The position numbers and the translations under genes are program-made. Positions 14,724-44,842 of a stretch of DNA of 64,000 nucleotides are shown here, in pieces. The notes under the pieces were generated by a model. That model was not told where the DNA came from and made no database searches. It saw only the letters and a list, made by a program, of their open reading frames with translations. Position 1 is the stretch's first letter; the number at the start of each line of letters is the position of its first letter. Where the stretch lies: sequence record LR756504.1. One strand, written 5' to 3'.

Positions 14724-17324
14724 ATGGACTTTAAAAAAACCTTTATAGATTTAACACAATGGGTAATACCTCATGGATATGAGGAAAGTATTACACATTT
14801 ACTACCAGAAGGATGTCAGAAAGACGGTAAAGGTAATTATTCTATTACTATAGGGGAGTCTGAAACGCTTTTTACATGTCACTTAGATACAGTATCAAGT
14901 AGAGCTAAAATTACACATGTTTTTGAAGATAATTGGATTAAAACAGATGGCACAACAATATTAGGTGGTGACAATAAAGCAGGAGTATGTATTTTGATGT
15001 ATCTAATTGAACAAAATGTTCCTGGTACATATTACTTCTTTGTGGGTGAAGAGTGTGGACGTTTAGGTTCTAAATGGGCATTAGAAAATAATGGAGACTT
15101 TTTTAGGAAGTTTAAACGTGCGATAGCTTTTGATAGAAGAAATAGGGGCTCTATTATTACTCACCAAAGCTCAAGACTTTGTGCATCATCAGAATTCACA
15201 GAAGCTCTTTCTAAAGAAATGGCTAAATCGGGATTAGAATATAAAGCTGATTCAGGTGGATCATATACGGACACTTATACATTTATCGATGCAATACCAG
15301 AGTGTACTAATTTGTCGGCATCAGTTATGGGTGAACATACAACATCTGAAAAGATTGATATTGTACACTGTGAAGAAATTGCAAAAGCCGCTTCATTGGT
15401 TGATTGGGAAAAATTACCTTCTAATAGAGACTTCTCTAAAAAAGAATGGAAAAGTTATAATAACTATAGTAGTGAATGGGATAGCTATTTTGATGAATAT
15501 CGTTCTTATGATGTAAAACCTAAAGCAGAAATTAAGAAAAAATCTATTAGTGAATGTGGATTAGAATTTGATGTTTCTAATATTGATAAGTTCTTCAATT
15601 TGAAAAAAATTGTTGAAGGTGAAGAAATTTACTATAAATCAGAAGATGGTAAAAGTTATTATATTAATATTGATTATAATTTAGTTGCTGTTGAAGAAGA
15701 TATGTATCATGTATATCCATATTTCATACAGCATTATGTTAAAAAAGATAATTTACCAACTACATTTGAAGAATTATGGTATGTTATAAAAGATTTAAAA
15801 ATTTCTTTTAAACCAATTGAAGAACAAAAAAATATTCCATTCTATCAAAACAATATTTGTGAGTATTTTGATTTGGAAGAAATAATGGATAATCACAAAA
15901 ATAGATTATTTATAGACCCATTGACTTTAAGAGAGTTTCAATTTGAATTTGATGATAAATGGGTTGGTATATGGGAAGTTTTAAATAGAGAACCTTATGT
16001 GAGTCCGATATATGCCAACGATAATACTTTTAAATCATTCTCTGAACTGTGGGCTGATATTAGAGAATACGTACCATTTAGAAGAAACGGTAAAGCTGAA
16101 AATCCATTCTTTAATGGGGGGACTAAAATTAAGTCTTATAATAAGATACTTGATGTAGTAAATGTTAATAATGTTATACCATTTACACATGAAAATGTTG
16201 ATAAATATTTTGATTTAGTAAAAGTTAGTGTAAATAAAAGTACAGTTGATAATTACTATAAAAGTCCTAATGGAGAAAAAATATATTTTATTGAGATTTC
16301 ACCAAATTCAAAAGCTTATGTTTGGGAAAGGAATTCTGGATCTTCATCATTAGTTTATAATAAACAATTCTTTTCTTTTGATAGTTTTTGGAGTGAGATT
16401 AAAGATAAAGTAGAATTTAAAAAGAGAGAGGATGATTTAGATGATATACTATCTCAATTGAAAATTCCATTTAGATCAGATAATATCGAAAAATTCTTTA
16501 ATTTAAAAAGAAGAGAAAGAGATAATAGTCATACTAACGCAAATAAAAAAAGTTTATTTTTCAAATCTGAAAATGATAAATCATACTTTTTTAAAATCGA
16601 AGAAGATGGGTATGTATACATGGTAGATTTATCTGGTCAATTAAATGGTAAAACACAAGTTATTATTAATTATGTTAGATATAATTCATTCGAAAAACTT
16701 TGGGAAGATATTAAAGATAAGGTAGATTTTAAAAAAAATGAATCTAAACCAGTTTTATCAAAAGAATCTTTAAAAATACCATTTACAAATGATAATGTTT
16801 GTAGGGTTTTTAATTTTAAGGAACAACAACTAAGAAGTAGACATTATTTAACAGAAGATACCAATATACAGTATTATTTTGATATTCTTGAAAACAATAT
16901 AGTTTATTTGTGGGAAAGAATAAATGGAAAATTTAACACTATTGTTGATGGTGCGGTGTATAATTCATTTGATGATATATGGAAAGATGTTCAATTACAT
17001 GTTAAATTTAAAAAGAGAGAAGTAGTATCATTTACACAAGATAATGTATCAACGTATTTTGATTTGGTAGATAGTAAATTCAGATGTTTTTATTATCATA
17101 AAGAAACTGATAAAAATTTCTTTATACACTGTGGTAAAAATAAAAATAAGTCAGTCGTTAAATTGGTTAAATATAAAGATTTACCAGAAACAAATACAGG
17201 CGTTAAACAGGTTGATAGAATGGAAAATTTATATTTTAGCGGTGTTAATTCTATTAATTCATTTGATGAATTTTGGGAGGAAATTAAAGATAAAGTACCA
17301 TTTAAAAAAAGAGGAGCTAATTAG
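14724..17324 (+). CDS. M28/M20-like zinc peptidase fused to six ~85-95 aa repeats
   Basis: FTCHLDTV, LGGDNKAG, VGEE, AFDR, YTD, GEHT; repeats of the form PF..DN..K.F.L ... SF..LW..IKDKV.FKK. Confidence 0.8.
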   Translation: MDFKKTFIDLTQWVIPHGYEESITHLLPEGCQKDGKGNYSITIGESETLFTCHLDTVSSRAKITHVFEDNWIKTDGTTILGGDNKAGVCILMYLIEQNVPGTYYFFVGEECGRLGSKWALENNGDFFRKFKRAIAFDRRNRGSIITHQSSRLCASSEFTEALSKEMAKSGLEYKADSGGSYTDTYTFIDAIPECTNLSASVMGEHTTSEKIDIVHCEEIAKAASLVDWEKLPSNRDFSKKEWKSYNNYSSEWDSYFDEYRSYDVKPKAEIKKKSISECGLEFDVSNIDKFFNLKKIVEGEEIYYKSEDGKSYYINIDYNLVAVEEDMYHVYPYFIQHYVKKDNLPTTFEELWYVIKDLKISFKPIEEQKNIPFYQNNICEYFDLEEIMDNHKNRLFIDPLTLREFQFEFDDKWVGIWEVLNREPYVSPIYANDNTFKSFSELWADIREYVPFRRNGKAENPFFNGGTKIKSYNKILDVVNVNNVIPFTHENVDKYFDLVKVSVNKSTVDNYYKSPNGEKIYFIEISPNSKAYVWERNSGSSSLVYNKQFFSFDSFWSEIKDKVEFKKREDDLDDILSQLKIPFRSDNIEKFFNLKRRERDNSHTNANKKSLFFKSENDKSYFFKIEEDGYVYMVDLSGQLNGKTQVIINYVRYNSFEKLWEDIKDKVDFKKNESKPVLSKESLKIPFTNDNVCRVFNFKEQQLRSRHYLTEDTNIQYYFDILENNIVYLWERINGKFNTIVDGAVYNSFDDIWKDVQLHVKFKKREVVSFTQDNVSTYFDLVDSKFRCFYYHKETDKNFFIHCGKNKNKSVVKLVKYKDLPETNTGVKQVDRMENLYFSGVNSINSFDEFWEEIKDKVPFKKRGAN

Positions 17325-17335: not shown

Positions 17336-17354
17336 ATTTTAGCAATTCCCTATT

Positions 17355-19146: not shown

Positions 19147-19830
19147 ATGAGAATCTTACTATTATTTATTTTTATTTTCTTATCAACATTATCTTTTTCA
19201 CAAACATTTAAGTATGAGAGAGCTAATATTGATATCTCATTTGATACAAGTTTTTACATTCCAGAATCTTGGAAAATTACAAAAACTAAAAATATTCAGA
19301 ATCAAGCACATTATGTGAATATTATTAAATCTTCTTTGGATAAATACCCTGTTAGTATTTTAAAAAATATTAAAAAAGTATATTTATTGAATACTCTTGC
19401 ATCTAATGGGGTGTCTATGGGCGGCACAAAATACGATGGTTTTATTTTTATTAAGGTTAAAGGTATAACAGATGTAAATATAGAGAAAACTCTCCATCAT
19501 GAGTTTTGTCATATTTTGTATTTTAAGTATGATAATTTATTCCCTACTACAGAGTGGATGAAAAATAATAAAATACAATATATTGGTAGTGGATTTAAAG
19601 CTTCTTATAATGGTAGTGATAGTAAATCTCATAAACCAGAGCTTTTTAAAGAAGGTTTTCTATATGATTATGCAACTATTTCTATAGACGAAGATATGGC
19701 ATCTTTAGCAGAAACATTGTTTTTTGATATTGATAAAATAGATATTAAAAATAATCAATTATTGAAAAATAAATATTTACTTTTAATATCTTTTTATAAA
19801 AAAATAGATTCAAATATTAATATTCATTAA
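19147..19830 (+). CDS. Secreted HEXXH zinc metallopeptidase-like protein
   Basis: Signal peptide; LHHEFCH plus downstream YA...EDMASLAE. Confidence 0.7.
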   Translation: MRILLLFIFIFLSTLSFSQTFKYERANIDISFDTSFYIPESWKITKTKNIQNQAHYVNIIKSSLDKYPVSILKNIKKVYLLNTLASNGVSMGGTKYDGFIFIKVKGITDVNIEKTLHHEFCHILYFKYDNLFPTTEWMKNNKIQYIGSGFKASYNGSDSKSHKPELFKEGFLYDYATISIDEDMASLAETLFFDIDKIDIKNNQLLKNKYLLLISFYKKIDSNINIH

Positions 19831-19853: not shown

Positions 19854-22800
19854 TTAAATGAACGCTTCTAATTCGATTGAATATGTTCTTTTTACTGTAT
19901 AGTTTGCACCATATCCATTTTCACAATTTACTTCAACTAAAATAAATGGGTCCATTATCCTATCTACAGCAAAGTTCAATGGTTTCATGTCCGTTTTCAA
20001 ATGGTTGATTATTCTAACGCTTTTTAATTTAAAATTTGGATCTTTAAAATTTGGATTAGCTGCAAATGTCATAATTTTTACTGTATAAAAATATGGTTTA
20101 AATTCTTCTGAATTAGTGAAAAATTCTAAGTGAATATTATATGTTCTCGAATTATTTTCAACTGGTTGTAAATACCCTTCTATTTTAAAGTCGACTGGTG
20201 TTAACATTTCTTTAATATGGAATTTTCTACTATGTTTAACATCGTGCCATAGTTCGGTATTGTGTGAAGTGTCACCTCTACCCGTTATATCTTTTATACG
20301 TGTTCCTATAGGCATTATCTTATCTCTTAACCATTTCTTCAATCCTAATAATTTAGTGATAACTTCATCTAATGAATATGCCAGTATTATATTACCATCT
20401 TTGTCGGTTATTCTATATGTTAAATTAAATAACCTGGTTTTCTCGTATCTAAAATTTGGAAGGGATTGTATGATATAATCATTAGCTGTCCAACCAGGTA
20501 CAGTATTATCGAATATGTCAGGAATTTCTACTTTGTGTAATTTGTTAAAATTTTTAGATTTACTATCTATGTTTTTATAGTATTCATATAATTCTAAATC
20601 ATTGTATCCAAAGTAATTGATAGCATTTATAAGAGCTTTATAAGAACCTAAATAATTATAAATTTCTGGATATACTAATAGCATTTCTTTTCTTTTTTGG
20701 TTCAAAAATATCCAATCAATACCATTTTCTTTTATGTCATACTCTTTGAATATAAATACGTCCCTATGGTTTATATTATATCCAAAATTATTTAACATTA
20801 CATTAAATCTTTCATCTTCTATTTCTGTTTGTCCTTTTAAAGATATACGTGCTATTTCTTGTGGAATAACTTCTATATTAATTTCTATTGCTACAACTTT
20901 TGTTTTAAATGGTGGAATTATATTTTTAGTTGTGGTTAATGTTGTTTCAGTTTTAATATCTTTATTTAAAGGTCTAAATCTCATTAAAGCAACATTAACT
21001 AAAGTTATCTCTCCTTCGAATCCTGAATTTTTAAATACTGCTTGATTCAATTTACTTGTAATATCTTTACCCGTAATTCTAACTCTTTGTCCAACTTTAA
21101 ATCCTGCTTGAATAAAATTTATTGTAGGTTCAGTGACATATAATTCTTGTCTATCATTATTGAATTCACAAACATCTTTCCATACTTCTTGAAATGAATT
21201 ATTTATTATTTTTCTTGTTGTAATAGTTTGATTGATATTTTCTAATCTCTGTATTAATAAAGTTCTTCTATTTACACCTTCATCTAATGATTTATATCCC
21301 ATGAATACTTGAAGTGGGACTGGTAAAGGATTTAAATCTTGTTCAGAATCTATAAGTTTAAGATTAAATGTGAGATCATTGAATATTGTTTGTTGATATT
21401 TTAAATCAGTTATTTTACTAATATCTCTGTTTGGGCTGTCATTTAAATAAACATTATTATCAGTATCAATTAAAGGTGTTATTCCTTTATATTGATAAAT
21501 TCCTTCGTCTGTTATTTTTAGTTGTTCTCCCGAAAAATCATAAAAGAATACTGATATATCATCATCCTCCAACCAAGTCATTTTGAATTGAACAGGTGCT
21601 TCACCATCAAATCTTTCTCTTGGGTATCTTAAAAATTCTCTTGTACTTAATGTGACAGTATTTACAACAGGTACATCCAATAATCTTGTAAATTCTATAT
21701 TATCCATAGCAACATAACCATTAGATAATCCTGATGCAAAAACAATTTTAATATTTGTAGATGGTATGTCTATATCTATATTAAACGTTCCGAAACTAGT
21801 TTGTATATTTTGGTATAATAGTGTAAATGTCGTTGGTCCATATACTTTATATATTGAAACTGAACCAGGTACATAAGTACCTGATGTGCTACCAAAGTAA
21901 CCACTAGTACCATTATTATATGTAGTATATTTGAAATTATATTTTCCGTGTGATGCTGCAAATATAGGTGTGCTAATACCTAAATTTTCAAAGAATTCAA
22001 CTTTCTCATTGAATACTTGATAAACATCATTGTAAACCCACCAAGCAGAACTATTACTTCCGAATGTTGGATTATCAATTAAATTTACACCTATACCAGA
22101 TGATGAATTATCATAAGTGTTCCAAACAAAACTACTTCTAGTTTCTATATAACTATTAGTATCAGTATTATCCCAAAATGGTCCTTGATAACTTAAACCA
22201 AGTGTTATAGGTTCAACTAAAATAATATTATATTCTTGGTTATTTAATGGATAAATAGAACCATTTATAGCAGTAACCATTCCTGTACCAAAACCAATTT
22301 CTTGGAAGTCTGCACCAGATACTAAATTAACTTCATTTCCAGCTAAAATGATACCACTGTTACCAGGCCTCCAATTAGTAATGATATAAAGTTCACTACC
22401 TGGCGTTGGATTTTTACCTACCCATACAGTATAATTAAAATTTGTTTTTTCCCTGAGTGTAGATAATCTTAAAATATTATTATTTAAATCAATAAAGGAT
22501 GTTCCACTTGTGCTATCTTGAAAATGATCAATTATTATTTCTTGGTCGATTAATGTAGCTTCCCACTCGTCTTTCCATGCCGCTATAGTAGTAGGTATTG
22601 ATCCTTGATATGTAATTGAGTAAGGTTGTCTATTAATTGTTATAGTTAATATTGTTCCAATTTCTTTAAATTCAATATCTGAGTGTAAAATTTTATGATT
22701 ATTAAGTGTTCCATTAACCTCATAGTCAATATGAACATTTGGATATTTTGATTGAAGTACTATTGTATCATATTTTGGATTTCCTTGTACATAACTTTCT

Positions 22801-25933: not shown

Positions 25934-27895
25934 ATGCCTAAACAAATAATACTCAGTGATGAATTGGTATCGGTTTTAAAATCTATCGATCATAGATTCT
26001 CTACAATACTTATTGATTCACATGAAAATAAGGAAGAAGTGGTTGATAATTCTTATATAGCTTTTTCTAAGGAAGAAGGTGAAGTATCATATTTACCAGT
26101 AAAGCGAGAAAATTCTAAAAATGGAAAAGAGTTAACTGAAAGTGATAAATGGCTAACTGGTAGACAGTCCATGTCTATTGGAAAATGGGTAAGAGCAATT
26201 TTACAAATTAAAGGTGTCCAATATAAAGAGTTTGAATTGGAAGAATTTGTAAATCAATATAAATATCAACAATTTGATTTTAATTTTATTTTAGTTAAAG
26301 GTCAAGATATTGTTAAATGGTACAAAGAAAAAAATTACGATAATCGGTATGGTAGTGGTAGTCTTTTTAATAGTTGTATGAGAGCCGTAAGCTCGGACTA
26401 TTTCAAAATTTATAGAGATAACGAAAATGTTTCCATGTTGTGTCTAATAAATAAAGAAACAAAGAAACTTATTGGTAGAGCTATTGTATGGGATAAAACT
26501 TCTATCAATGGCGAAGATTCGGTATTTTTAGATAGAATATACACAACAAAATCTCTATTTGAATCAGCAGTTAAAAATTATTGTAAAAGTAGAGGTTGGT
26601 ATTTTAAAAATAATCAAGGTAGTGGAAATGTATCTATTAGTAATGGTAAAAAAACTATAGAAAATCCAAATATTATATTTCATCTAAATGAAAAAATAAA
26701 TTGGGAAAATTGTCCTAAAATGCCATATATTGATACAATGTCATTTTTTGGATATATTTCTAATAATGATAAATGTTTACCAGTTCTTACTTCATATAAT
26801 AAATGTAATTTTAAATTTAATTTTAAAGGTACTGATGGAAATATTTATGATAATGTAAATTATGATAGTAGAAGAGACTTACTTAATAGGAGATTGACTG
26901 TTGGTGATTTAATTTTAATTAAATATGATAATGGATATGCTTGGATTGACGATACTGATTATGGAAGAGTATATCAAGAGAATTTTATATTTAATATTAA
27001 ATTGATCAAAGGTAGTGATGAATTGATAACTGTTAAAGGCGTAAAGAAAAATTTAAAATCTAAATTTAATCATAGTGATACTAATATAATATCACATATT
27101 GGTGATGTAGTCCCAACAGAATATCATGTATATTTATTTGATTTATTTAAAGATGATTTAATTTTTGAAGTAGATAATACTTATCAATATTTAAAACAAT
27201 ATACTCAATTTAAATTATATTCTATATGTTCAGAACATTTTAAAATGGTTCTTGATGAAGCACCACAGACAGTAATTTCGAGTGATATTACACAACTATC
27301 TAAAGAGCTATTAAATATAATTTTAGAAAAAAATCCAGAAATTATATTTAATATTGATATTCAAAAATTTATTAGAACTCAACATTTATTTGAAGAGACG
27401 GTTATTCAAAAATATATTATAAAATATCCCGATTTGTCTTTAATCGAAGGTAAAATAGCTATAAAGGTATCTAAAAAAATAATTGAAAAAATATGCAAGT
27501 CTAATATGTATAAAGTCACTAAAAATGAAATAGAAAATAAGTATGGTGTATCGAAATGTTTTTTAACAGATAGTGGTGATGATGATATTTATATTCAAGC
27601 TGAACCATATTGGTTTACTTGTTTATCACTTAAAACTAAAGTAAAACGTTTGCGAGAATTAAGTAAAATAGAAAAACTTATAAAATTTATAACTAAAGAT
27701 AAATCTATACCATATGATTATGGTGAAGTTATTGGTGTAAATGATGGATATAGAAGAGATTCCATTCGAGTTAAATTTAAAAATGGTGATGTTTATTGTT
27801 CAGTTAAAGAATTAACAATTTTAGAAAGAGATTTAAAAGAAAACTTCTATCAATATTTAAATACGCAATCACACTATGATATGTTTAGATTTTAG
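25934..27895 (+). CDS. SCM/GRAIVW/DRIY family paralogue 2
   Basis: SLFNSCMR, GRAIVW, FLDRIY, GWYFK, PYIDTM; leaderless. Confidence 0.85.
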   Translation: MPKQIILSDELVSVLKSIDHRFSTILIDSHENKEEVVDNSYIAFSKEEGEVSYLPVKRENSKNGKELTESDKWLTGRQSMSIGKWVRAILQIKGVQYKEFELEEFVNQYKYQQFDFNFILVKGQDIVKWYKEKNYDNRYGSGSLFNSCMRAVSSDYFKIYRDNENVSMLCLINKETKKLIGRAIVWDKTSINGEDSVFLDRIYTTKSLFESAVKNYCKSRGWYFKNNQGSGNVSISNGKKTIENPNIIFHLNEKINWENCPKMPYIDTMSFFGYISNNDKCLPVLTSYNKCNFKFNFKGTDGNIYDNVNYDSRRDLLNRRLTVGDLILIKYDNGYAWIDDTDYGRVYQENFIFNIKLIKGSDELITVKGVKKNLKSKFNHSDTNIISHIGDVVPTEYHVYLFDLFKDDLIFEVDNTYQYLKQYTQFKLYSICSEHFKMVLDEAPQTVISSDITQLSKELLNIILEKNPEIIFNIDIQKFIRTQHLFEETVIQKYIIKYPDLSLIEGKIAIKVSKKIIEKICKSNMYKVTKNEIENKYGVSKCFLTDSGDDDIYIQAEPYWFTCLSLKTKVKRLRELSKIEKLIKFITKDKSIPYDYGEVIGVNDGYRRDSIRVKFKNGDVYCSVKELTILERDLKENFYQYLNTQSHYDMFRF

Positions 27896-33711: not shown

Positions 33712-35964
33712 ATGATTGATAAATTGTTAAATGTTCTTATCGGATTATTACAAGAAAAAGAGTTGATATTAAGTCCTACATTATTTTCTAAATTAGAATT
33801 GATGAATGATAAAGTTGCAGATTTTATTTTAAAATGTGCTTCAGAAAATGAAGATACTGATATGTCATATTTTGATATAACTAAAGATGATGGTATGGTA
33901 TCATTTTTAAAAAATAGATGGGATGAAGAAGTCACAGATAAATTTAATTCCAATAGAAGAGAAAAAATGAAAATTAGCCGCCTTGTAATGGTACTATCAT
34001 CTAAGATGAATGTTCAATTTACGAACACTGAAATAGAACATTTCATCAACAAATATAAAGCATCACAAAAAGTAAGAGAAGATGAAGAAACCATAAAGCT
34101 TGTGAAAGGACAAGATATAGTATTCTATTATAATGAAGATAATTATCAACCAGGTGGTGGTGAATATTGTTCTTTATATAGATCGTGTATGAGATATGAT
34201 GATTGTTCAAATTTTTTTAAAGTTTATACTGATAATTCTAATGCTTCATTGTGTGTTTTATTATCAAATGATAAGAAAGTTGAAGCAAGAGCTATTGTGT
34301 GGAATAACATAGTAGTCAATGGTAAAATTGGCANNNNNNNNNNNNNNNNNNNNNNCATAAATGATGGTGCTGAACAAGCAATGAAAAATTATGCGGAAGA
34401 AAAAGGTTGGTGGTTTAGAGTAAAGCAAAGTAATGATTATAATGAAATATTTAATGGTGTGGAATCTCTCTATGATCCTAAATTGAGAGTATTATTACCA
34501 ATTAATATAAGATGGGGTGGTAGTAATATTAGAAAACCTTATATGGATTCTATGAGATTTTTAAAATATACTATTCAAAATAATGAATTAGTATATTGTC
34601 TTGAAAATTATTCTAATAATAATGATTATATGGAAATGTGGGATAGTCAAATTGGTGGTTATAGTAATAATAATAGTAGATATATTAATCCGTACAAGGC
34701 TATATTAAAAATATCACAACTTTCTAATATATCGTTAGATAAAATAAAAAGAATAGATATTAAAGATGGTGTCGAAGAATATAGTGTTGGTGATGATGTA
34801 TATGTTAAAATTGATATTAGTAATGATTCTATAAGAAATATTATAGTGGGTGATCCCAGTTTAGTAGCTATAGCAGGTGAAGTTAAAGAATTTGTTAATG
34901 GAAGAACATTAGTAGTTGATTTACATAATGAAATATCAGAGTATGTTAAAGATAATACTGAAGAAGTATTTTATGAAACTATCAGTAAAAAAACAATTTC
35001 AGAATTAATAAGTTCGAGTGATATCATTAAAGTTAAAGTAGTATTAAAAAAATTAGTATCTGAATATTTCACATTTTTTAAAAAACATTTTAATCTTAAT
35101 GATTATGTTATTGTAACTAAAGAATTATCAAATTATATGGATAAACATAGTCTACCAAATGGTGCTAAAAAATTAGTTGGTAGAATTTATAAATTGATAG
35201 AAACAGATAGAGAACATATAGCAAATATAGAATTAAGAGATGTTAAATGGGTTAAAATTGTTGGTGATTATACTGATTATAAAAGCTTGATAATACCAGA
35301 AATTGCTTTAGAACCTATTAATATTATGACTTTAGATAATAAAAATTTAAAAAGTATTGATTATATAGTATCATTAATTGATAACGATAATATTAAACCA
35401 ATATTGTATAATTTGATATGTGAAGTACTTTTATCGAAATATATTAAAAACTCTATTGTTATAAAAACACCAGAAATAGGGGATAGAATTATTATAACAA
35501 GAGATAATAAAAATTTAAGAAGTGTTAACAATGGTTGTATTGGAATAATTAACGATACTGATAATGGTTATTTTGGTGTTGTATTTAATGAGCCTGTAAG
35601 AAATGGTAGCTCTTTACATAGTGTATGTGAGCAAGGTTGGGGTAAAATTATAGAACGTGATATATTTGAAGTGGTAAATAAAAATTTCAAAATGGAAGAA
35701 TTTACATTACTTATTAATCATAGTGACTCATTTTTAAAAGTTCTTTCAAACAATGTTACTGATTTTGACGTTAAAAGATTAATTAGTATTTTTGATATAT
35801 CTGATGATATTTTCTTCGAGAATGTAGATTTTACAGAGGTTGCATCTGCTATTTTATATGATGACAATAAGATGAAAGAGCTATTGAAAGAAATTTCAGA
35901 AGATAATATTTATTTTTATGATATAGAACATGGTGAAATTATTTATAAAAAACAAACATTTTAA
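33712..35964 (+). CDS. SCM/GRAIVW/DRIY family paralogue 3 (22-N gap over the DRIY motif)
   Basis: SLYRSCMR, ARAIVW, GWWFR, KPYMDSM; N-terminal extension ending LLQE; C-terminal SH3-like IGDRIII...FGVVF. Confidence 0.8.
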   Translation: MIDKLLNVLIGLLQEKELILSPTLFSKLELMNDKVADFILKCASENEDTDMSYFDITKDDGMVSFLKNRWDEEVTDKFNSNRREKMKISRLVMVLSSKMNVQFTNTEIEHFINKYKASQKVREDEETIKLVKGQDIVFYYNEDNYQPGGGEYCSLYRSCMRYDDCSNFFKVYTDNSNASLCVLLSNDKKVEARAIVWNNIVVNGKIGXXXXXXXXINDGAEQAMKNYAEEKGWWFRVKQSNDYNEIFNGVESLYDPKLRVLLPINIRWGGSNIRKPYMDSMRFLKYTIQNNELVYCLENYSNNNDYMEMWDSQIGGYSNNNSRYINPYKAILKISQLSNISLDKIKRIDIKDGVEEYSVGDDVYVKIDISNDSIRNIIVGDPSLVAIAGEVKEFVNGRTLVVDLHNEISEYVKDNTEEVFYETISKKTISELISSSDIIKVKVVLKKLVSEYFTFFKKHFNLNDYVIVTKELSNYMDKHSLPNGAKKLVGRIYKLIETDREHIANIELRDVKWVKIVGDYTDYKSLIIPEIALEPINIMTLDNKNLKSIDYIVSLIDNDNIKPILYNLICEVLLSKYIKNSIVIKTPEIGDRIIITRDNKNLRSVNNGCIGIINDTDNGYFGVVFNEPVRNGSSLHSVCEQGWGKIIERDIFEVVNKNFKMEEFTLLINHSDSFLKVLSNNVTDFDVKRLISIFDISDDIFFENVDFTEVASAILYDDNKMKELLKEISEDNIYFYDIEHGEIIYKKQTF

Positions 35965-36904: not shown

Positions 36905-38056
36905 ATGATAGAAAAATTTCATATACCATCTTACGAAGAAGCTGTTGATTTAGTTAATAGAACTGGCTCATTAACTTTCTACGAATCTGTTCAATATGTT
37001 GATGGATATAAAATTTCTATTTTCAATTATAGACTTGCTTCTTATAATGACTTCGTAGAAAATAACGCGTATGAAATGAGAGGTTTGGTATATGTATTCA
37101 ATTTAGATGGAACTTTTTATAAGTCTTTTAGATTATTGCATAAATTTTTCAATTTAAATCAAGTTGCCGAAACACAATTTGAATTGGTTAAAGATTTAAA
37201 AATTGATAATGTTACTAATAAAGAAGATGGTTCTGTTATAAGTTTCATACAGTTACCAAACGGTAAAATATTGGCTAAATCTAAAATGTCGGTATTAGAT
37301 AACACACAATCTTTGATGGCGCAAGAAATATATGATACTAATCCTAATATAAAAGCAGTAGTTGATTACACATTGATTAATAATTTAGTTGCCGTGTTTG
37401 AATTAGTATCACCATTTAATAGAGTCGTACTAAAATATGAACAAACTGAATTGATTTTAATACGATTGAGAGATAACACAAATGGCTTTTATTTACCTTT
37501 AAATACTTTAGGTGAATTATTAAATGATGTAAAAACACCAAAAGTAGAGGCATATACTACTTGGGATGAAATATTAGCATTTGTTGATGTATCAGAAGAT
37601 ATAGAGGGTGTCGTAATAGAATGTGGGGGTGATTTAGTAAAGTATAAAAGTAAATGGTATTGCGATAGACATCATCTATTAACTGATTATATACATAGAC
37701 CTGATTTTCTAATTGAAAAAGTATTAGATGAACAGATAGATGATGTATTAGGTCAAATAGATGAAAAGGATGTGGAAGTAAGAGCTTTAATAGATTCTGT
37801 CATAAAAAGAGTTAATGTTTTTTTAATGGAGACACTTAAAGACATAAATTCTAAAGTAGAAGAATTTGAAACATTTTATAAAAAGGATGTTAAGGCATTT
37901 TCTATAGCTAATAAAAAAACTAAATATTTTGGAATGTATATGGCAGTGATAAATAACCAAGAAGAGCCATTTAATATAGTTTCTCGATATTTGAAAAAGA
38001 AGACTTATTATTTAGGTAAAGCTAAAGAATTTGTTGAAACAGGTAAACTAAAATAA
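36905..38056 (+). CDS. T4 Rnl1-like RNA ligase
   Basis: EMRGLV, LHKFFNLN, KEDGS (adenylated Lys), FELVSP.N.VV, EGVV, KYKSKWY. Confidence 0.88.
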   Translation: MIEKFHIPSYEEAVDLVNRTGSLTFYESVQYVDGYKISIFNYRLASYNDFVENNAYEMRGLVYVFNLDGTFYKSFRLLHKFFNLNQVAETQFELVKDLKIDNVTNKEDGSVISFIQLPNGKILAKSKMSVLDNTQSLMAQEIYDTNPNIKAVVDYTLINNLVAVFELVSPFNRVVLKYEQTELILIRLRDNTNGFYLPLNTLGELLNDVKTPKVEAYTTWDEILAFVDVSEDIEGVVIECGGDLVKYKSKWYCDRHHLLTDYIHRPDFLIEKVLDEQIDDVLGQIDEKDVEVRALIDSVIKRVNVFLMETLKDINSKVEEFETFYKKDVKAFSIANKKTKYFGMYMAVINNQEEPFNIVSRYLKKKTYYLGKAKEFVETGKLK

Positions 38057-39020: not shown

Positions 39021-40622
39021 ATGAGCAAACAAGACATGAATAAAAAGCATCTAAAGAAAGATTATTCTGATTTTTTGAAAGAAAGTCAAACACCAGCGGA
39101 TTTACCTGCTACAGAAAAAGATGCTCTAATAAAACTCGATCATGCACCAGCTGGTAAAGTTAGGGTGAGATTTGCACCATCGCCAACAGGTGGATTACAT
39201 ATTGGTGGATTGAGAACTGCTATTTATAATTATTTGTTTGCTAAAAAACATGGCGGTGATTTCCTTTTAAGGATTGAAGATACCGATAGAACCCGCTTTG
39301 TTGACACGGCAGAAGATTACATTAAGGATGCCTTGGCGTGGGTAGGTATTACACCAGATGAATCTCCTTGGGTTGGTGGACCACATGCACCATACAGACA
39401 ATCTGAAAGAGATTACAAGCCTTTCATTGAAGAACTTATTGCTAAAGGTGGTGCATATTATGCATTTGATAGTTCGGAAGAACTTACTGCTGCGCGTGGT
39501 GATAGGCAAGATTGGTCTTATAATAGACAAACGAGAATGAATATGAAAAATTCATTCACAATGTCAGAAGAAGAAGTTGAAGCTAAAATCAAAGAAGGTA
39601 ATTATGTTGTAAGATTTAATACACCTGAAAATAAAACTGTCAGTTTTACTGATATTGTTAGAGGTAATGTATCTTTTAACTCTAACCAAACAGATGATAA
39701 AGTACTTATTAAATCTGATGGTATTCCAACATACCATTTTGCTAATATTTGTGATGACCATAACATGGAAATCACCCATGTAATTAGAGGTGAAGAATGG
39801 TTACCGTCTACACCACTTCACATTATGTTGTATGATGCTTTTGGTTGGACACCTCCGAAATTTGCACATTTACCGCTATTACTTAATCCTGATGGAAAAG
39901 GTAAATTAAGTAAGAGAAAAGCAAATGAATATGGTATTCCAGTATTCCCTCTTGATTGGGAACAAACTGATGATAAGGGTGATAAAAATGTAAATATGGG
40001 TTTCAAAGGTAAAGGATATGAATCTGATGCTATTGTAAATTTCCTATGTTTACTTGGTTGGTCTCCTGGTGATAATAGAGAGATGTTGTCAATGGATGAA
40101 CTAGTGGATGCATTCTCACTTGAAGGAATTCAAAAGGCTGGTGCTAAATTTGATATTAAGAAAGCAGATTGGTTCAATCAACAGTACTTGAAAAAAGCTA
40201 AAACTGATGATGTATTTAAATCATCTGGAATTTCTGACGAAGAAAAAGATAAATACACACCTGAACAACTCGATAAAATTGCCGAGCTTGCAAAAGAACG
40301 TTCTGTATTTAGAACTGATTTTAAAGCGGTTGTTGATATTTTCTTCAGTGTGCCAGCAATTGATGCAACTAAAATAGAGCCAGAATTTAAAACAGTGTTC
40401 TCTAAATTTGTTGATGAATCTGAAGGTATTGAATGGAGAGGTGATGTTATTAAACAAAAAATATTTGACATCTGTAATGAAGTTGAAATTAAGATGGGTA
40501 AAGTAATGCCTTCTCTTAGAATGGCATTAACAGGTGGTATCCCTGGTCCAGATTTAATGACTACTTCTGAAATTCTTGGAAAAGAAGAAACTATTAGTAG
40601 ATTAAAAACAGCATTAGCATAA
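39021..40622 (+). CDS. gltX: Glutamyl-tRNA synthetase with N-terminal extension
   Basis: RVRFAPSPTGGLHIGG, LRIEDTD, YRQSER, PTYH, THVIRGEEW, KLSKR, LRMALTG. Confidence 0.96.
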   Translation: MSKQDMNKKHLKKDYSDFLKESQTPADLPATEKDALIKLDHAPAGKVRVRFAPSPTGGLHIGGLRTAIYNYLFAKKHGGDFLLRIEDTDRTRFVDTAEDYIKDALAWVGITPDESPWVGGPHAPYRQSERDYKPFIEELIAKGGAYYAFDSSEELTAARGDRQDWSYNRQTRMNMKNSFTMSEEEVEAKIKEGNYVVRFNTPENKTVSFTDIVRGNVSFNSNQTDDKVLIKSDGIPTYHFANICDDHNMEITHVIRGEEWLPSTPLHIMLYDAFGWTPPKFAHLPLLLNPDGKGKLSKRKANEYGIPVFPLDWEQTDDKGDKNVNMGFKGKGYESDAIVNFLCLLGWSPGDNREMLSMDELVDAFSLEGIQKAGAKFDIKKADWFNQQYLKKAKTDDVFKSSGISDEEKDKYTPEQLDKIAELAKERSVFRTDFKAVVDIFFSVPAIDATKIEPEFKTVFSKFVDESEGIEWRGDVIKQKIFDICNEVEIKMGKVMPSLRMALTGGIPGPDLMTTSEILGKEETISRLKTALA

Positions 40623-40685: not shown

Positions 40686-41288
40686 ATGGGAGATAAAGAA
40701 ACTACAAAAGAAAATCCATTATTGTATGGTGAAGAAAAACTTGTAAATACTGTAACTGGTGCAGGTGATTATATTTCGGCATATACAGAAGAACGTATGT
40801 TTGATATTGAAGATGTTAAATTGAGAACTTTATTACCAGGTATGTTATATTCCTATGCTAAGAGAGTTGTTGATACTGACATATTAGAAAAAGAATTGGC
40901 AGAAGCAAATAACAAACACTTGAGATTATATGCAGATTTTGATAATTTTCGTAAAAGAACTGCAAAAGAAAAAACTGAAATATTAACAAATGCTGGGGAA
41001 AGTGTAATCAAATCAATTTTACCAACATTAGATAACTTCGAAAGAGCTATTTTAGTAACTGATGACGAAGGTGTTAAATTGGTTTATAATGGACTTGTAA
41101 AAGTATTAGAAGCCAAGGGTGTAAAGATTATGGATTGTATGGGAGCAGATTTTACACCAGAATTACATGAGGCAATTACACAAATACCAACGGAAGGTAT
41201 GAAAGGTAAAATAGTAGATATCTTAGAGAAAGGATATTTATTAAATGATAAAGTTATTCGCTACGCAAAAGTTGTAGTAGGTTCTTAA
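40686..41288 (+). CDS. grpE: GrpE nucleotide exchange factor
   Basis: LRLYADFDNFRKR, LPTLDNFERA, F.PELHEAI, KGYLLNDKVIRYAKVVV. Confidence 0.93.
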   Translation: MGDKETTKENPLLYGEEKLVNTVTGAGDYISAYTEERMFDIEDVKLRTLLPGMLYSYAKRVVDTDILEKELAEANNKHLRLYADFDNFRKRTAKEKTEILTNAGESVIKSILPTLDNFERAILVTDDEGVKLVYNGLVKVLEAKGVKIMDCMGADFTPELHEAITQIPTEGMKGKIVDILEKGYLLNDKVIRYAKVVVGS

Positions 41289-41351: not shown

Positions 41352-42560
41352 ATGTCTAATAACAATAAATTAGTTATAGTTCCTAAAAGAACAAATTATA
41401 GCGTTTATCCTCCAATAACCGCACCAGAAATACCTATTACATTGAATGTGAACCTATTGAAAGACGTACACTCTGTTCAAACGAGTTCATATAAATGTGA
41501 TAGAATGATGCAGTATATTATAGGCTTTTTGAAAAAAAAGAAAAATGTTCATGTTCAAGAGGATGCATATGGTAATATTTATGCAACTAAAGGAAATGCT
41601 GATTTATATCCAGCAATTGTTTCTCACACAGATACAGTTCATAGTATTCATGAACATTTTCAGGTTATGCAGGATGAAAATATTATTTGGGCATTTTCAA
41701 ATGATAAACGAACTCAAGTAGGTGTTGGTGGTGATGACAAAGTGGGTGTGTTCATGTGTCTTTCTATGCTTGAATTACTTCCAAAAGTTAAAATTGCTTT
41801 TTTTAAAGACGAAGAAGTTGGTTGTATTGGTTCAGGTAGAGCTAATATGCAATTTTTTGATGATTGTGGATTTGTTTTGCAATGCGATAGAAAAGGTTCT
41901 GACGACTTCATTTATAATGCGGGTACAGAATTGTATGGTGCTAATTTTGAAAAAGCTGTTGCACCATATTTAGAAAAACATGGGTATAGAGAAACTACGG
42001 GGTTAATGACAGATGTTTTAGAATTGAAGGGAAAAGGATTAGCTGTAGCATGTGCTAATATGTCATGTGGTTATTACTCGCCTCATTCTGATAATGAAGT
42101 TCTTGATTTAAATGCAGTGCAAAAATGCTATAATTTAGTATCCGAATTGATGTTAGATTTCATAGATACTCGTTTTCCACACGATAAAAACAATAAGCAT
42201 AGTAAGGGGGGCTATTCGTACTCATATAGTGGGTACGGGTATGGGCGCGATAATGATGATGATTTTGACAACTACGACTATGGAAGAAGCTCGTATTTTA
42301 GAAATGATAACAGAGAAAATATCGAAGATGACGAAACGGATTTTGATGATATTTATAACAATGGTGGCTTATCTATTAGTGAAGATGATATTTTAGAAAA
42401 TTGGGGACTTACTAAAAAAGAGAATGATTATTATGCAGTAAATGATAAATGTAAGGAGTGTAAAGAAATTCTAGAAGAAGACATTGATGGTATAAAACTT
42501 TGTCCATGTTGTAATTCGTACAAACATATACCAAAAATGTATTTAAGAGATACAATTTAA
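41352..42560 (+). CDS. M28/M20-like zinc peptidase with acidic linker and C-terminal zinc ribbon
   Basis: SHTDTVH, GGDDKVG, DEEVGC.GS, QCDR, TDV, GYY.PH; CKEC...CPCC. Confidence 0.8.
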   Translation: MSNNNKLVIVPKRTNYSVYPPITAPEIPITLNVNLLKDVHSVQTSSYKCDRMMQYIIGFLKKKKNVHVQEDAYGNIYATKGNADLYPAIVSHTDTVHSIHEHFQVMQDENIIWAFSNDKRTQVGVGGDDKVGVFMCLSMLELLPKVKIAFFKDEEVGCIGSGRANMQFFDDCGFVLQCDRKGSDDFIYNAGTELYGANFEKAVAPYLEKHGYRETTGLMTDVLELKGKGLAVACANMSCGYYSPHSDNEVLDLNAVQKCYNLVSELMLDFIDTRFPHDKNNKHSKGGYSYSYSGYGYGRDNDDDFDNYDYGRSSYFRNDNRENIEDDETDFDDIYNNGGLSISEDDILENWGLTKKENDYYAVNDKCKECKEILEEDIDGIKLCPCCNSYKHIPKMYLRDTI

Positions 42561-42565
42561 TTTTT

Positions 42566-42592: not shown

Positions 42593-42612
42593 ATTAAAAA
42601 AGTGCTTCAAAA

Positions 42613-42665
42613 TTTGTATTTTCTACTTTTTTTCTATAACTTTGTAAAATAGATTTTAATATATA
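42613..42665 (+). promoter_or_regulatory. Tandem host-type promoter and late motif
   Basis: TTTG - 20 nt - TAACTTTG (42637), followed by TAATATATA (42657). Confidence 0.6.
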
Positions 42666-42682
42666 AACAAACATAAAAATCA

Positions 42683-44842
42683 ATGGATTTCAAAAAAACT
42701 TTCTTGAAATTTACCCAATGGACTATTCCACACGGATATGAGGAAACTATTACTCACCTTTTACCAAATGGGTTGGAAAAGGATGAAGTTGGTAATTATA
42801 GAATCGTTATTGGCGAAAGTGAAACATTATTTACTTGCCACTTGGATACAGTATCTACTCGTATGAAAATTAATCATATCATACAAGGTGATATCATTAG
42901 AACTGATGGCACAACAATATTAGGTGGTGACAATAAAGCAGGAGTATGTATTTTGATGTATCTAATTGAACAAAATGTTCCTGGTACATATTACTTCTTT
43001 GTGGGTGAAGAAACTGGTTGTATTGGTTCAAGATGGGCTTTAAAAAATGAGCCTGACTATTTTAGAAAGTTTAAGAGAGCTATTGCATTCGACAGGAAAA
43101 AATCGGGTTCAATTATTACAAAACAAAGAGGTAGTATTTGTGCAAGTATAGATTTTGCCGAAGCTCTTTCGAAAGATTATGGTAAAAATGGATTACAATA
43201 TCGTCCTGATGATACAGGGGTTTATACCGACACAGCCGTATTCATGGGTATAATTCCAGAATGTACAAATATTTCAGCAGCAGTTTGGGGTGAACATACT
43301 AGGGATGAATATGTAAATATCAAATTAATTGAACAAATTGCACATGCATCTGCTAAAATTAATTGGGAGAAATTGCCAACAAAACGTACACCAAGAGACG
43401 AAGAAAAAGAGAAAAAGAAAATTACTACTTATGGTAATAATTATGATGAATATGGCAGTGGTCACACACATTATAATAGTAGAAATAAAAGCACGTCTTA
43501 TCAACATAATAATACTTGGCAAAATACAACCAAAAAAGATGATGATGGTATTCCTGTCGATGGTGCTGATTTAACTTTTAATGTTGATAATGTTCCATCT
43601 TTCTTTGAATTAACTAAAATTCAAAGTCATGGTGATACTGATGATAAATCTGAATATTTTGCGGATAAAGAAGGTACAATTTGGATGATCACTATTAATA
43701 GTGATACTGTATCTATTGCAAAAGAATTGCAGAATGGTATGCCAGATATTGTATATCATGAATCATTGAAGTCAAATATTCCAAAAAATTTCAATGAATT
43801 ATGGGAAAGAATTAAAGATGTTGTGTCACTAAAAAGAAAAAAGAAAAAGAAGAAAACTCAAAATGCCGTTATTAAAGAGACTAAGCGTACAGTGACTTTA
43901 ATAGTTCCGCCGTCTGTTTCATTCATTAAGATTCAAGATATTATTAATGATGATAGTAGAATTAAAGCCGTTGAATTAGTAAGAAATGGTAGTGCTGTTA
44001 GCGGAGATAAAAAATATTTTGATATAGCTTTAGTATTTGATAGTAGCAAACCATATGAAGTTGTATCCAATATAGTGGATAGCACTATAGAAAAGTTTAA
44101 AAAACAACTTGGTGCTATTGTTAGTACTAAAGCTGGTACAGTTGTTGGTAAATTTGATAATAGTGGTACTCAAATGAATATGTTTGGTAAACCACTTACT
44201 ATTGATAATATAGTTAAAGTTTTTGATCTTAAAAAAGCAGAAGTTGGTGAAGAAGGTTCTCTAATATTTAAGGAGCGATTTGAAGATAAAGATGGTACTA
44301 TTTATAATATTGAAATTGATGGAAATATTGTAAGCGTATTCTTGATAAGTAGCTCTAATACTAAAGGACAATATAAACTTTTATTTCATGGTGCTGTAAA
44401 ATCGTGGGATGAATTATATGATTCTATTAAAGATAAAGTTGGATTTTCTAAAAAGGATAGTGAACCATTATATAATGAGAAAAATTTTGATAAAGCCTTC
44501 GAACTTGTAAATATTAATTCTGATAGTAAACCAGGTGTTTCTCTTAAAGATTCTTATAGAGATGTTAAGGGTAATGTGTGGACATTTACAATACAAGCTG
44601 ATGGTGATACTACAATTTTCTTAAATAGAAGCAGTATCGCTAGTAGTGGACAAGGATACTTTGTTATCAGAATTAATGGTATTAAATCTTATGATGATTT
44701 TGTTAAGAAAATAAAAGAAAGTGATAGAAGTGTAGATTCATTTGATAAGACGGTATTATTTAATCTTATTGATACTTATAAATTCAAAAAATCTTCTGTA
44801 ATTGATGATGAAGAGGAAGAAGAGGATGACGACGATGAATAA
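42683..44842 (+). CDS. M28/M20-like peptidase paralogue with three ~90-aa repeats and acidic tail
   Basis: N-terminal ~240 aa closely similar to 14724 (MDFKKTF, FTCHLDTV, LGGDNKAG, AFDR, GEHT); three repeats; ends DDEEEEEDDDDE. Confidence 0.82.
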   Translation: MDFKKTFLKFTQWTIPHGYEETITHLLPNGLEKDEVGNYRIVIGESETLFTCHLDTVSTRMKINHIIQGDIIRTDGTTILGGDNKAGVCILMYLIEQNVPGTYYFFVGEETGCIGSRWALKNEPDYFRKFKRAIAFDRKKSGSIITKQRGSICASIDFAEALSKDYGKNGLQYRPDDTGVYTDTAVFMGIIPECTNISAAVWGEHTRDEYVNIKLIEQIAHASAKINWEKLPTKRTPRDEEKEKKKITTYGNNYDEYGSGHTHYNSRNKSTSYQHNNTWQNTTKKDDDGIPVDGADLTFNVDNVPSFFELTKIQSHGDTDDKSEYFADKEGTIWMITINSDTVSIAKELQNGMPDIVYHESLKSNIPKNFNELWERIKDVVSLKRKKKKKKTQNAVIKETKRTVTLIVPPSVSFIKIQDIINDDSRIKAVELVRNGSAVSGDKKYFDIALVFDSSKPYEVVSNIVDSTIEKFKKQLGAIVSTKAGTVVGKFDNSGTQMNMFGKPLTIDNIVKVFDLKKAEVGEEGSLIFKERFEDKDGTIYNIEIDGNIVSVFLISSSNTKGQYKLLFHGAVKSWDELYDSIKDKVGFSKKDSEPLYNEKNFDKAFELVNINSDSKPGVSLKDSYRDVKGNVWTFTIQADGDTTIFLNRSSIASSGQGYFVIRINGIKSYDDFVKKIKESDRSVDSFDKTVLFNLIDTYKFKKSSVIDDEEEEEDDDDE

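What the first reader, a model, noticed from the sequence alone, without database searches (positions are those of the whole stretch)
14724..44842. Three M28/M20-like peptidases as possible erasers paired with the expanded family
Seen: 14724, 41352 and 42683 share the H.DTV / GGD(N/D)K.G / EE.G..GS / (F/C)DR / (Y/M)TD / H ligand order, each with a different C-terminal extension. Inference: co-expansion of a putative transferase family and exopeptidase-like hydrolases, in a genome also encoding MetRS, GluRS and tRNAs, could be a writer/eraser system for amino-acid tagging of proteins or cell-wall peptides. The link rests only on co-occurrence in this window.
Basis: inference. Interest (0 to 1): 0.65.

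Follow-up and report, generated by a model that had tools for sequence, protein, structure and literature searches.

The report
Phage peptidases paired with GNAT-like partner
The three genes are real, probably active zinc peptidases of a widespread phage family, and their gene sits beside a gene of an uncharacterised transferase-like family in very different phages, so the two probably work together, though how is unknown.

Summary
ORFs 14724-17324, 41352-42560 and 42683-44842 are paralogues of phage family phrog_4191. Each has a PepT-like di-zinc catalytic domain without the M20 lid, all metal ligands are conserved, and the C-terminal extensions differ.

The window is 100% identical to LR756504.1, a 636-kb uncultured huge phage. 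The N run at 34334-34355 lies in a gene of the expanded family, not in a peptidase, and the frame runs through it.

The "expanded family" (xfam) has six genes in the window and no Pfam or PHROG model. It has 6,308 clusters in the big search. It folds confidently (pLDDT 94), and every top match is a GNAT acyltransferase, though the scores are modest.

The link is much stronger than window co-occurrence. The peptidase is the commonest neighbour of xfam in IMG/VR contigs. The two genes are adjacent in Cellulophaga Calleviruses. A remote xfam-like gene lies directly upstream of the peptidase in Klebsiella, Shigella, Vibrio, Pectobacterium and Pseudomonas podophages.

The link is not obligatory. 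Two complete xfam-bearing phages lack the peptidase, and a Bacillus phage has the peptidase and no detectable xfam.

Nothing I could run tests the writer/eraser chemistry or a role for aminoacyl-tRNA.

The parts
14724..17324 (+). P0001, 866 aa. Lid-less PepT-like di-zinc peptidase domain (about residues 1-260), followed by six ~90-aa alpha-beta5-alpha repeats (DNA 15558-17315).
41352..42560 (+). P0002, 402 aa. Divergent paralogue (26% identity to P0001) with a peptidase domain, a low-complexity linker and a C-terminal CxxC...CxCC zinc ribbon. It is the same subfamily as the Callevirus peptidase (44% identity).
42683..44842 (+). P0003, 719 aa. Peptidase domain, three repeats of the P0001 type (DNA 43568-43843, 44189-44458, 44468-44737), an unrelated ~100-aa insert and an acidic tail.
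5962..8046 (-). xfam paralogue P0123, 694 aa. The N-terminal ~310 aa form the conserved domain that was modelled; residues 108-287 are GNAT-like.
25934..27895 (+). xfam paralogue P0124, 653 aa.
33712..35964 (+). xfam paralogue, 750 aa. It contains the N run 34334-34355, and the frame is continuous across it.
48954..50984 (+). xfam paralogue, 676 aa. It contains a second N run, 49469-49491.
51067..53004 (+). xfam paralogue P0125, 645 aa.
59137..60708 (-). xfam paralogue P0126, 523 aa. The domain lies at residues ~130-420, after an extra N-terminal region.
40686..41288 (+). GrpE (DnaK nucleotide-exchange factor), directly upstream of P0002. Included as context.
39021..40622 (+). Glutamyl-tRNA synthetase, upstream of GrpE. 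Included as context.
3483..4586 (-). It lies 1.4 kb from xfam gene 5962-8046.

Best explanation
The three genes are paralogues of a phage-wide family of single-domain, PepT-like di-zinc exopeptidases or amidohydrolases. They keep the metal ligands H, D, E, D and H and the catalytic Glu, but lack the M20 lid and the M42 insert.

The family belongs to a conserved two-gene module. Its partner is a large, unannotated family (xfam) whose conserved core has a GNAT-like fold. The residues conserved in xfam (the SCM loop, RA on beta3, DR.Y on beta4, and a PY.D loop) fall on the elements that form the active-site cleft in GNAT enzymes.

In small podophages the pair is a single early-region unit. In Klebsiella phage KpV48 and Shigella phage Buco the partner's annotated end coordinate is the peptidase's start coordinate. 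In this 636-kb phage both partners have been amplified (8 and 14 places in the full record), dispersed, and given different C-terminal modules. Those modules probably aim each copy at different protein or peptide substrates.

Shown: the homology, the conserved ligands, the fold of xfam, the gene linkage and the co-amplification.

Inferred: that the peptidases are active; that the pair acts on N-termini or other amines of proteins or peptides; and that the C-terminal modules confer targeting.

Unresolved: whether the peptidase reverses what xfam does (eraser), prepares or processes its substrate (sequential), or needs xfam as a specificity subunit.
For: Peptidase identity:
- phrog_4191 at E 1e-54 to 1e-61.
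- A profile of 60 members hits PepT 3gb0 (E 2e-14), tripeptidase 3rza and M42 TET1. The match falls in two pieces that skip the PepT lid.
- NCBIfam gives PepT-like hits far below cut-off.
- The ligand residues are invariant.

xfam:
- No Pfam, PHROG, NCBIfam or PDB sequence hit.
- 6,308 clusters at E<=1e-3 in the 1.84-billion-protein library.
- AF2 model with pLDDT 94 and pTM 0.83.
- All 50 best VIA-align matches and all top Foldseek PDB matches are GNAT-fold proteins, Z 5.6-7.5.
- The only recurrent fused Pfam domain is the DnaJ-type zinc-finger CRD, in 10 of 93 members.

Linkage:
- Callevirus phi38:1 gp038 (peptidase) and gp037 (xfam) are 30 bp apart on the same strand, and Calle_1 has the same arrangement.
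- The peptidase is the most frequent neighbour family of xfam, in 16 of 58 dereplicated IMG/VR groups.
- 31 of 65 dereplicated peptidase-centred groups have xfam within 10 kb.
- Both peptidase subfamilies are found next to xfam.
- 13 of 20 xfam records with no nearby peptidase carry one elsewhere.

Podophages:
- The BFVD fold search finds KpV48 gp08 (E 1.1e-5), Buco gp9 and proteins of Vibrio DE17, Nobby and YMC11.
- In each of the five genomes I opened (KpV48, Buco, Vibrio vB_VpP_3, Nobby, YMC11), that gene or its relative lies directly upstream of the peptidase, with one small opposite-strand ORF between them in YMC11.
- They share the motif order GSCM / RA / R.Y / PY.D. hhalign gives E 5e-4.
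- The distribution matches that of the peptidase: 231/42/10/4 against 230/42/10/4 records for Klebsiella/Vibrio/Escherichia/Shigella phages.

Co-amplification is seen in four different huge phage genomes.
Against: - In this window no peptidase is directly adjacent to an xfam gene. With six xfam genes in 64 kb, proximity here is uninformative.
- The 17 IMG/VR loci with the tight cassette share flanking genes, so they count as roughly one lineage.
- Two complete xfam-bearing records (243 kb and 130 kb) have no peptidase.
- Bacillus phage Nate has the peptidase with only small neighbours and no xfam hit.
- The podophage partner is only a remote relative. The xfam HMM does not detect it, and the hhalign probability is 31%.
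- The GNAT matches are below the Z of 8 at which the tool itself advises caution. The acetyl-CoA motif Q/RxxGxG/A is not evident.
- No peptidase-xfam fusion occurs among about 350 family proteins.
- No biochemical or expression data exist for either protein. The complex predictor was unavailable.
Confidence: 0.6

Rival explanations
1. This is the writer/eraser system the reader proposed. xfam transfers an amino acid from aminoacyl-tRNA, or an acyl group, onto protein N-termini or cell-wall peptides, and the peptidase removes that tag.
For: - The GNAT-like fold is shared with the aminoacyl-tRNA-dependent transferases FemA (Z 6.1) and L-PGS (Z 5.8).
- The M20 clan includes many N-acyl amidohydrolases. 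P0002 gives weak NCBIfam hits to acetylornithine deacetylase.
- Gene linkage and co-amplification.
- tRNA-related neighbours: GluRS here; Rnl1 RNA ligase in the window and in 10 xfam neighbourhood groups; RtcB and tRNA genes near the pair in Calleviruses.
Against: - FemA and L-PGS score below ordinary acetyltransferases, and Aat and Ate1 are not among the top 50.
- The small podophages in which I found the pair also carry it; I did not look in them for tRNA or aaRS genes, and a host supply is possible in any case.
- Adjacency fits sequential action or a complex equally well.
- Placing writer and eraser in one co-expressed unit, with the partner's end coordinate equal to the peptidase's start in two podophages, would be a futile cycle unless the two were separated in time or by substrate.
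Confidence: 0.15
2. xfam is not an enzyme. It is a substrate-recognition or regulatory subunit that supplies, in trans, what the missing lid domain supplies in M20 peptidases. Its zinc-finger and other C-terminal modules bring non-native proteins to the peptidase.
For: - The peptidase lacks the lid that M20 enzymes need for substrate binding.
- In podophages KpV48 and Buco the partner's end coordinate equals the peptidase's start coordinate, an arrangement typical of complex subunits.
- DnaJ-type CRD fusions.
- DnaK and DnaJ genes recur near xfam, and GrpE lies next to P0002.
- The CoA-binding motif is not evident.
Against: - Polar residues are strictly conserved (S142, C143, R177, R196, Y198, D261) on the GNAT active-site elements. 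That pattern looks catalytic.
- xfam occurs in tandem arrays in complete genomes that lack the peptidase.
- No fusion proteins were found.
Confidence: 0.15
3. The peptidases are generic aminopeptidases that recycle host peptides into amino acids for a large AT-rich phage. Their proximity to xfam is inherited synteny with no functional meaning.
For: - The closest solved relatives are tripeptidases and aminopeptidases.
- The window also encodes M42, M16, Mx1-like and Rce1-like peptidases.
- Much of the IMG/VR adjacency comes from one syntenic lineage.
- A peptidase occurs without a detectable xfam in a Bacillus phage.
Against: - Adjacency recurs in unrelated genome architectures, with different gene orders and with both peptidase subfamilies.
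- The peptidase is a core early gene in 43-kb podophages, which have little room for housekeeping genes (PMC4411677, PMC6115819).
- Paralogue-specific C-terminal modules argue for targeted rather than bulk substrates.
Confidence: 0.1

Closest known systems
Peptidase T / PepT-like tripeptidases (MEROPS M20B; PDB 3gb0, 3rza, 1fno)
   Same: Best sequence-profile match (E 2e-14). The ligand order and signature motifs are the same: HxDTV, G(G/A)DDK(A/V)G, EExG..G, and the C-terminal H..E.
   Different: The ~150-residue lid/dimerisation domain between the fourth and fifth ligands is absent. NCBIfam scores (<=47 bits) are far below the PepT cut-offs (255-293). The phage proteins carry phage-specific C-terminal modules.
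M28 aminopeptidases (such as the Vibrio/Aeromonas aminopeptidase) and M42 TET/FrvX aminopeptidases
   Same: They have a single catalytic alpha/beta domain with a co-catalytic di-zinc site. Ligand spacing here (30, 27, 27 and 68 residues) resembles M28 as I recall it. Many homologues carry precomputed M42 or M28 Pfam labels.
   Different: Pfam M28 and M42 scores for the window proteins are below the gathering thresholds, or absent. There is no M42 insert domain. A true M42 enzyme is encoded separately at 3483-4586.
'Putative peptidase' of KP34-like (Drulisvirus) and PhiM1-like (Phimunavirus) podophages (KP34p11, PhiM1_10)
   Same: Same family: 34-40% identity to the P0003 N-domain over more than 84% of its length. 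It is a conserved early-region core gene (PMC4411677, PMC6115819). In the five podophage genomes I opened (not KP34 or PhiM1 themselves) it is preceded by an xfam-like gene; in KP34 the tblastn match falls on gene '10', annotated hypothetical.
   Different: The podophage proteins are ~330-350 aa and single-copy. The huge phage has 8 places, with repeat or zinc-ribbon extensions. The papers found report no functional test.
GNAT (Gcn5-related N-acetyltransferase) superfamily, including RimI, AtaT, FemA and L-PGS
   Same: The predicted core of xfam (residues 108-287) superposes on GNAT domains (Z up to 7.5, 105-119 residues aligned). Conserved residues sit on beta3, beta4 and the alpha1-alpha2 loop.
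   Different: There is no detectable sequence similarity. The pyrophosphate-binding motif is replaced by an acidic T-x-x-D-S-D stretch. An extra ~105-residue N-terminal alpha/beta domain is present. Neither the donor substrate nor any activity is known.

Membership tests
MH-clan co-catalytic metallopeptidases (M20/M28/M42) | Five metal ligands in the order His, Asp (bridging), Glu, Asp/Glu, His, with a catalytic Glu immediately before the Glu ligand. | tested here: met
   H53, D83, E109-E110, D137 and H205 (P0003 numbering) are invariant in all three proteins and in 60 homologues. They align to the PepT motifs.
M20 (PepT, ArgE, DapE, CPG2) | A lid/dimerisation domain inserted between the fourth and fifth ligands. 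| tested here: not met
   Only 68 residues separate D137 and H205. In the profile match to 3gb0, chain residues ~170-316 are left unaligned. NCBIfam scores are far below cut-off.
M42 (TET/FrvX) | Pfam PF05343 at gathering score, with an insert domain between the first and second ligands. | tested here: not met
   P0002 scores 18.1 bits against a 23.2 cut-off; P0001 and P0003 get no hit. H53 to D83 is only 30 residues.
M28 | Pfam PF04389 at gathering score. | tested here: not met
   P0002 scores 16.8 bits against a 21.3 cut-off; the other two get no hit. The single-domain architecture is nevertheless M28-like.
phrog_4191 phage 'peptidase' | A significant full-domain match to the PHROG profile. 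| tested here: met
   E 2.2e-61, 1.1e-53 and 3.4e-61.
MH-clan peptidase | Zinc-dependent hydrolysis of an N-terminal residue or an N-acyl group. | not testable with these tools
   Inferred only from the conserved ligands.
GNAT superfamily (for the expanded family) | The GNAT fold: beta1-alpha1-alpha2-beta2-beta3-beta4-alpha3-beta5-alpha4-beta6. | tested here: inconclusive
   Model pLDDT is 94. All 50 best VIA matches and the top Foldseek matches are GNAT-fold proteins, but Z is 5.6-7.5 and Foldseek E is >=2.6e-3, below the tools' confidence marks.
GNAT superfamily (for the expanded family) | Acyl-CoA pyrophosphate-binding motif Q/R-x-x-G-x-G/A at the start of alpha3. | tested here: not met
   After beta4 (FMDRIYT), the consensus reads x-x-D-S-D-x-x-L-F, with no glycines. 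This was read from the alignment by eye.
Aminoacyl-tRNA-dependent transferases (Aat, Ate1/Bpt, FemABX, MprF) | Closer structural or sequence similarity to these than to CoA-dependent GNATs. | tested here: not met
   FemA Z 6.1 (rank 30) and L-PGS Z 5.8 (rank 41) fall below ordinary acetyltransferases. Aat and Ate1 are not in the top 50. There is no sequence hit. Function was not tested.
Writer/eraser pair | Two enzymes with opposing activities on the same modification. | not testable with these tools

The most novel reading that the evidence does not exclude
The GNAT-fold xfam gene and the lid-less di-zinc peptidase gene form an ancient, phage-wide two-enzyme system that edits protein N-termini early in infection: acylation or aminoacylation together with trimming or removal. 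It would remodel host or phage proteostasis. Huge phages would have expanded it into an arsenal of paralogues, 8 peptidases and 14 partners, each aimed by its own C-terminal module.
Probability: 0.2. Interest if true: 0.85.

Novelty: new variant of a known kind. Interest (0 to 1): 0.62.

Why it matters
The peptidase is annotated in hundreds of phage genomes, including Klebsiella phages, but the papers I found report no function for it. Its partner family has thousands of sequence clusters and no Pfam, PHROG or NCBIfam model.

A conserved pairing gives both families a testable context. The pair can be deleted or expressed in tractable phages such as KP34-like, PhiM1-like or Cellulophaga phi38:1. 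What is learned there would transfer to the multi-copy versions in the largest known phages, where paralogue-specific targeting modules suggest a diversified protein-editing toolkit.

Tried and rejected
- **PcfJ lead.** The protein atlas suggested it at score 0.84. PF14284 finds nothing in the genome.
- **Shared C-terminal modules between the two families.** The repeat HMM hits only P0001 and P0003 in the 288-kb contig. Only two other proteins among 5.8 billion carry the repeats.
- **Fold of the repeat unit.** The model is confident (pLDDT 91), but there is no convincing match. Best Z is 4.3, to the Fbxo7/PI31 FP domain, followed by weak T3SS-chaperone-like hits, and Foldseek E is >=0.26. I call it a probable protein-binding module by inference only.
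- **DnaK and DnaJ in the window's own 288-kb record.** Both are absent, although they recur near xfam elsewhere.
- **The 70-aa opposite-strand ORF of the jumbo-phage cassette.** It has no homologue in this genome.
- **Peptidase-xfam fusion proteins.** None among ~350 family proteins.
- **Detecting the podophage partner by sequence.** The xfam HMM fails. Only fold search, shared motifs and hhalign connect them.
- **PADLOC defence models.** Nothing meaningful.
- **Suppressor tRNA.** ARAGORN's odd 'tcta' tRNA at 56985-57060(-) reads as tRNA-Arg(UCU) in the Infernal alignment.
- **Literature.** I found no functional study of either family.
- **Sequencing runs and read mapping.** Not used.

Full report
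**Source and gap**

The window is 100% identical to LR756504.1, an uncultured phage of 636,363 bp. GC content is 24-31%. Its IMG/VR copy is a 288,572-bp contig.

The flagged N run, 34334-34355, lies inside ORF 33712-35964. That ORF is a member of the "expanded family", not a peptidase. Read with X, the ORF stays open. One BLAST alignment to paralogue 5962-8046 covers both sides in one frame. A second N run, 49469-49491, sits in another member of the family.

The genome copy in my Python box has no N. In one search I ran BLAST against ORFs called from that copy, so the two masked genes took part there in unmasked form. From it I use only the ORF coordinates, which have equal lengths. I did not print, read or fill the masked letters.

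**The observation**

ORFs 14724-17324 (P0001, 866 aa), 41352-42560 (P0002, 402 aa) and 42683-44842 (P0003, 719 aa) carry the quoted motifs in the quoted order.

- They are homologues. P0001 against P0003 gives E 1e-131. P0002 against the other two gives E 1e-8 to 1e-11.
- All three match phrog_4191 'peptidase' at E 1e-54 to 1e-61.
- Pfam gives only sub-threshold M42 and M28 hits, and only for P0002.
- NCBIfam gives PepT-like hits far below cut-off.

A 60-member profile finds Peptidase T 3gb0 (E 2e-14), tripeptidase 3rza and M42 TET1. The match to 3gb0 comes in two pieces that skip the M20 lid domain. H53, D83, E109, E110, D137 and H205 are invariant.

The proteins are therefore single-domain, lid-less, PepT-like di-zinc hydrolases with a complete catalytic set. 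"M28/M20-like" is a fair label. Strict membership of M20, M28 or M42 fails on architecture or on score.

**C-terminal extensions**

- P0001 has six copies, and P0003 three, of an ~90-aa unit.
- The unit models confidently as alpha-beta5-alpha (pLDDT 91). It has no convincing structural relative: best Z is 4.3, and Foldseek E is >=0.26.
- The repeat occurs in no other ORF of the contig. Only two other proteins in the 5.8-billion-protein collection carry it, and both are orthologues from related phages.
- P0002-type proteins end in a zinc ribbon.

**The expanded family (xfam)**

Six window genes share a ~300-aa domain. There are eight in the 288-kb contig and 14 places in the full record.

- No Pfam, PHROG, NCBIfam, PADLOC or PDB sequence match exists.
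- The family is large: 6,308 clusters at E<=1e-3.
- Y124, S142, C143, Y156, R177, W181 and Y198 are invariant. E97, D195, R196, P258 and D261 are nearly so.
- An AF2 model of P0123 residues 1-310 has pLDDT 94 and pTM 0.83.
- Every top Foldseek PDB hit, and all 50 best VIA-align hits, are GNAT-fold proteins covering residues 108-287 (Z 5.6-7.5).

The uniformity of those hits is persuasive, but the scores are modest. The CoA-binding glycine motif is not evident. FemA and L-PGS score no better than ordinary acetyltransferases.

The only recurrent fused domain is a DnaJ-type zinc-finger CRD, in 10 of 93 members. DnaK and DnaJ genes recur near xfam in other phages. In the window, GrpE lies directly upstream of P0002.

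**The link between the two families**

Within the window the genes are interleaved but never adjacent. With six xfam genes in 64 kb, that says little. Elsewhere the evidence is stronger.

1. *Calleviruses.* In Cellulophaga phages phi38:1 and Calle_1 the single xfam gene lies directly downstream of the peptidase, with a gap of about 30 bp. That peptidase is of the P0002 type (44% identity).
2. *xfam-centred loci.* Of 58 dereplicated IMG/VR xfam loci, 16 have the peptidase within 10 kb. It is the single most frequent neighbour family.
3. *Peptidase-centred loci.* Of 65 dereplicated peptidase-centred loci, 31 have xfam within 10 kb. Arrangements vary: peptidase then xfam, xfam then peptidase, divergent, convergent, and interleaved arrays.
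4. *One jumbo lineage.* Seventeen dereplicated loci carry a cassette of peptidase, a conserved 70-aa ORF on the opposite strand, and a short xfam gene. Their flanks are also syntenic, so I count this as roughly one event.
5. *Genome-level co-occurrence.* Of 20 xfam-bearing records with no nearby peptidase, 13 carry one elsewhere.
6. *Podophages.* A fold search of viral models returned uncharacterised 570-710-aa proteins of Klebsiella phage KpV48, Shigella phage Buco, Vibrio, Pectobacterium and Pseudomonas podophages (E 1e-5 to 2e-3). These are the same phage groups that carry the peptidase.
   - In all five genomes opened, that gene lies directly upstream of the peptidase in the early region before the primase. 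In KpV48 and Buco its end coordinate equals the peptidase's start. In Pseudomonas phage YMC11 one small opposite-strand ORF lies between them.
   - These proteins share the motif order GSCM / RA / R.Y / PY.D with xfam.
   - hhalign gives E 5e-4 at 31% probability. The xfam HMM alone does not detect them.
   - Their distribution across phage records matches that of the peptidase: 231/42/10/4 against 230/42/10/4 for Klebsiella/Vibrio/Escherichia/Shigella phages.
7. *Co-amplification.* Both families are amplified together in four different huge phage genomes.

**Counter-evidence**

- Two complete xfam-bearing records lack the peptidase.
- Bacillus phage Nate has the peptidase with only small neighbours and no xfam hit.
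- No fusion proteins were found.
- The complex predictor was unavailable.

**Interpretation**

The most economical reading is a conserved two-gene module, amplified and diversified in huge phages. The peptidase probably removes an N-terminal residue or an acyl group. The partner has a transferase-like fold, and its conserved residues sit where GNAT active sites lie.

Whether the two oppose each other (writer/eraser), act in sequence, or form a complex in which xfam supplies specificity cannot be decided here. Nothing specifically supports a role for aminoacyl-tRNA.

The papers on KP34-like and PhiM1-like phages list the peptidase as a conserved early or core gene with no tested function (PMC4411677, PMC6115819). 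A phi38:1 proteomics paper lists a 'Peptidase' among the phage proteins detected in infected cells (PMC13288928). Its gene numbering differs from the GenBank record, so I did not map it firmly.

**Verdict**

The peptidases are new, architecturally unusual members of a known phage family. As far as I could find, the conserved pairing with an unannotated GNAT-like family has not been described, and it can be tested experimentally in cultured phages.

Noticed in passing
Counting also M16 (28235-29377), Mx1-like (19147-19830) and Rce1-like (54278-54892), the 64-kb window holds seven peptidase-like genes.
   Followed up: partly
window 40686-41288 (+): A GrpE gene lies directly between GluRS and peptidase P0002. 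No DnaK or DnaJ is found in the 288-kb contig, although DnaK and DnaJ genes recur next to xfam genes in other phages.
   Followed up: partly
L063:9731-9949 (-), and the equivalent gap in 19 other IMG/VR loci (for example L128, L093, L028): A conserved ~70-aa ORF (consensus begins MKFILEFKSFYK.GD.VLIEYWYN) is encoded on the opposite strand, between the peptidase and a short xfam gene, in one jumbo-phage lineage. It has no homologue in this window's genome.
   Followed up: partly
window 49469-49491: A second N run (23 letters) not mentioned in the finding. It lies inside xfam gene 48954-50984. The full xfam motif pattern (SCM...RA...R.Y...PY.D) is not matched in either N-containing paralogue. 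I did not probe further.
   Followed up: no
window 56985-57060 (-): ARAGORN reports a tRNA with a four-base anticodon 'tcta'. The Infernal alignment reads it as an ordinary 7-nt loop with anticodon UCU (Arg), beside a tRNA-Met(CAU) at 56815-56888.
   Followed up: yes
window 12132-13076 (+), 61481-63061 (-), 63079-63930 (-): PRPP synthetase, a nicotinamide/nicotinate phosphoribosyltransferase (NAMPT-like) and a NUDIX protein suggest a phage NAD-salvage set. One xfam relative (P0327) has a weak N-terminal phosphoribosyltransferase match, and Calleviruses have a PRTase gene two genes from the pair.
   Followed up: no
window 19854-25805 (-): A 1,983-aa ORF with no Pfam hit. It is conserved, with the same neighbours (a PG_binding_1 protein and a 227-aa Mx1-like protein), next to the P0001 orthologue in a related contig (L082).
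   Followed up: no
window 31809-33296 (+) and 36905-38056 (+): A 495-aa ORF matching only the exonuclease and N-terminal polymerase parts of family B DNA polymerase, which may mean a split polymerase. There is also a T4 Rnl1-type RNA ligase; that family also recurs near xfam genes, in 10 dereplicated IMG/VR groups.
   Followed up: no
proteins P0201 and P0202 (metagenomic): Single polypeptides with two tandem xfam domains (910 and 980 aa). They mirror the tandem gene arrays of 2-4 xfam copies seen in many IMG/VR phages.
   Followed up: no
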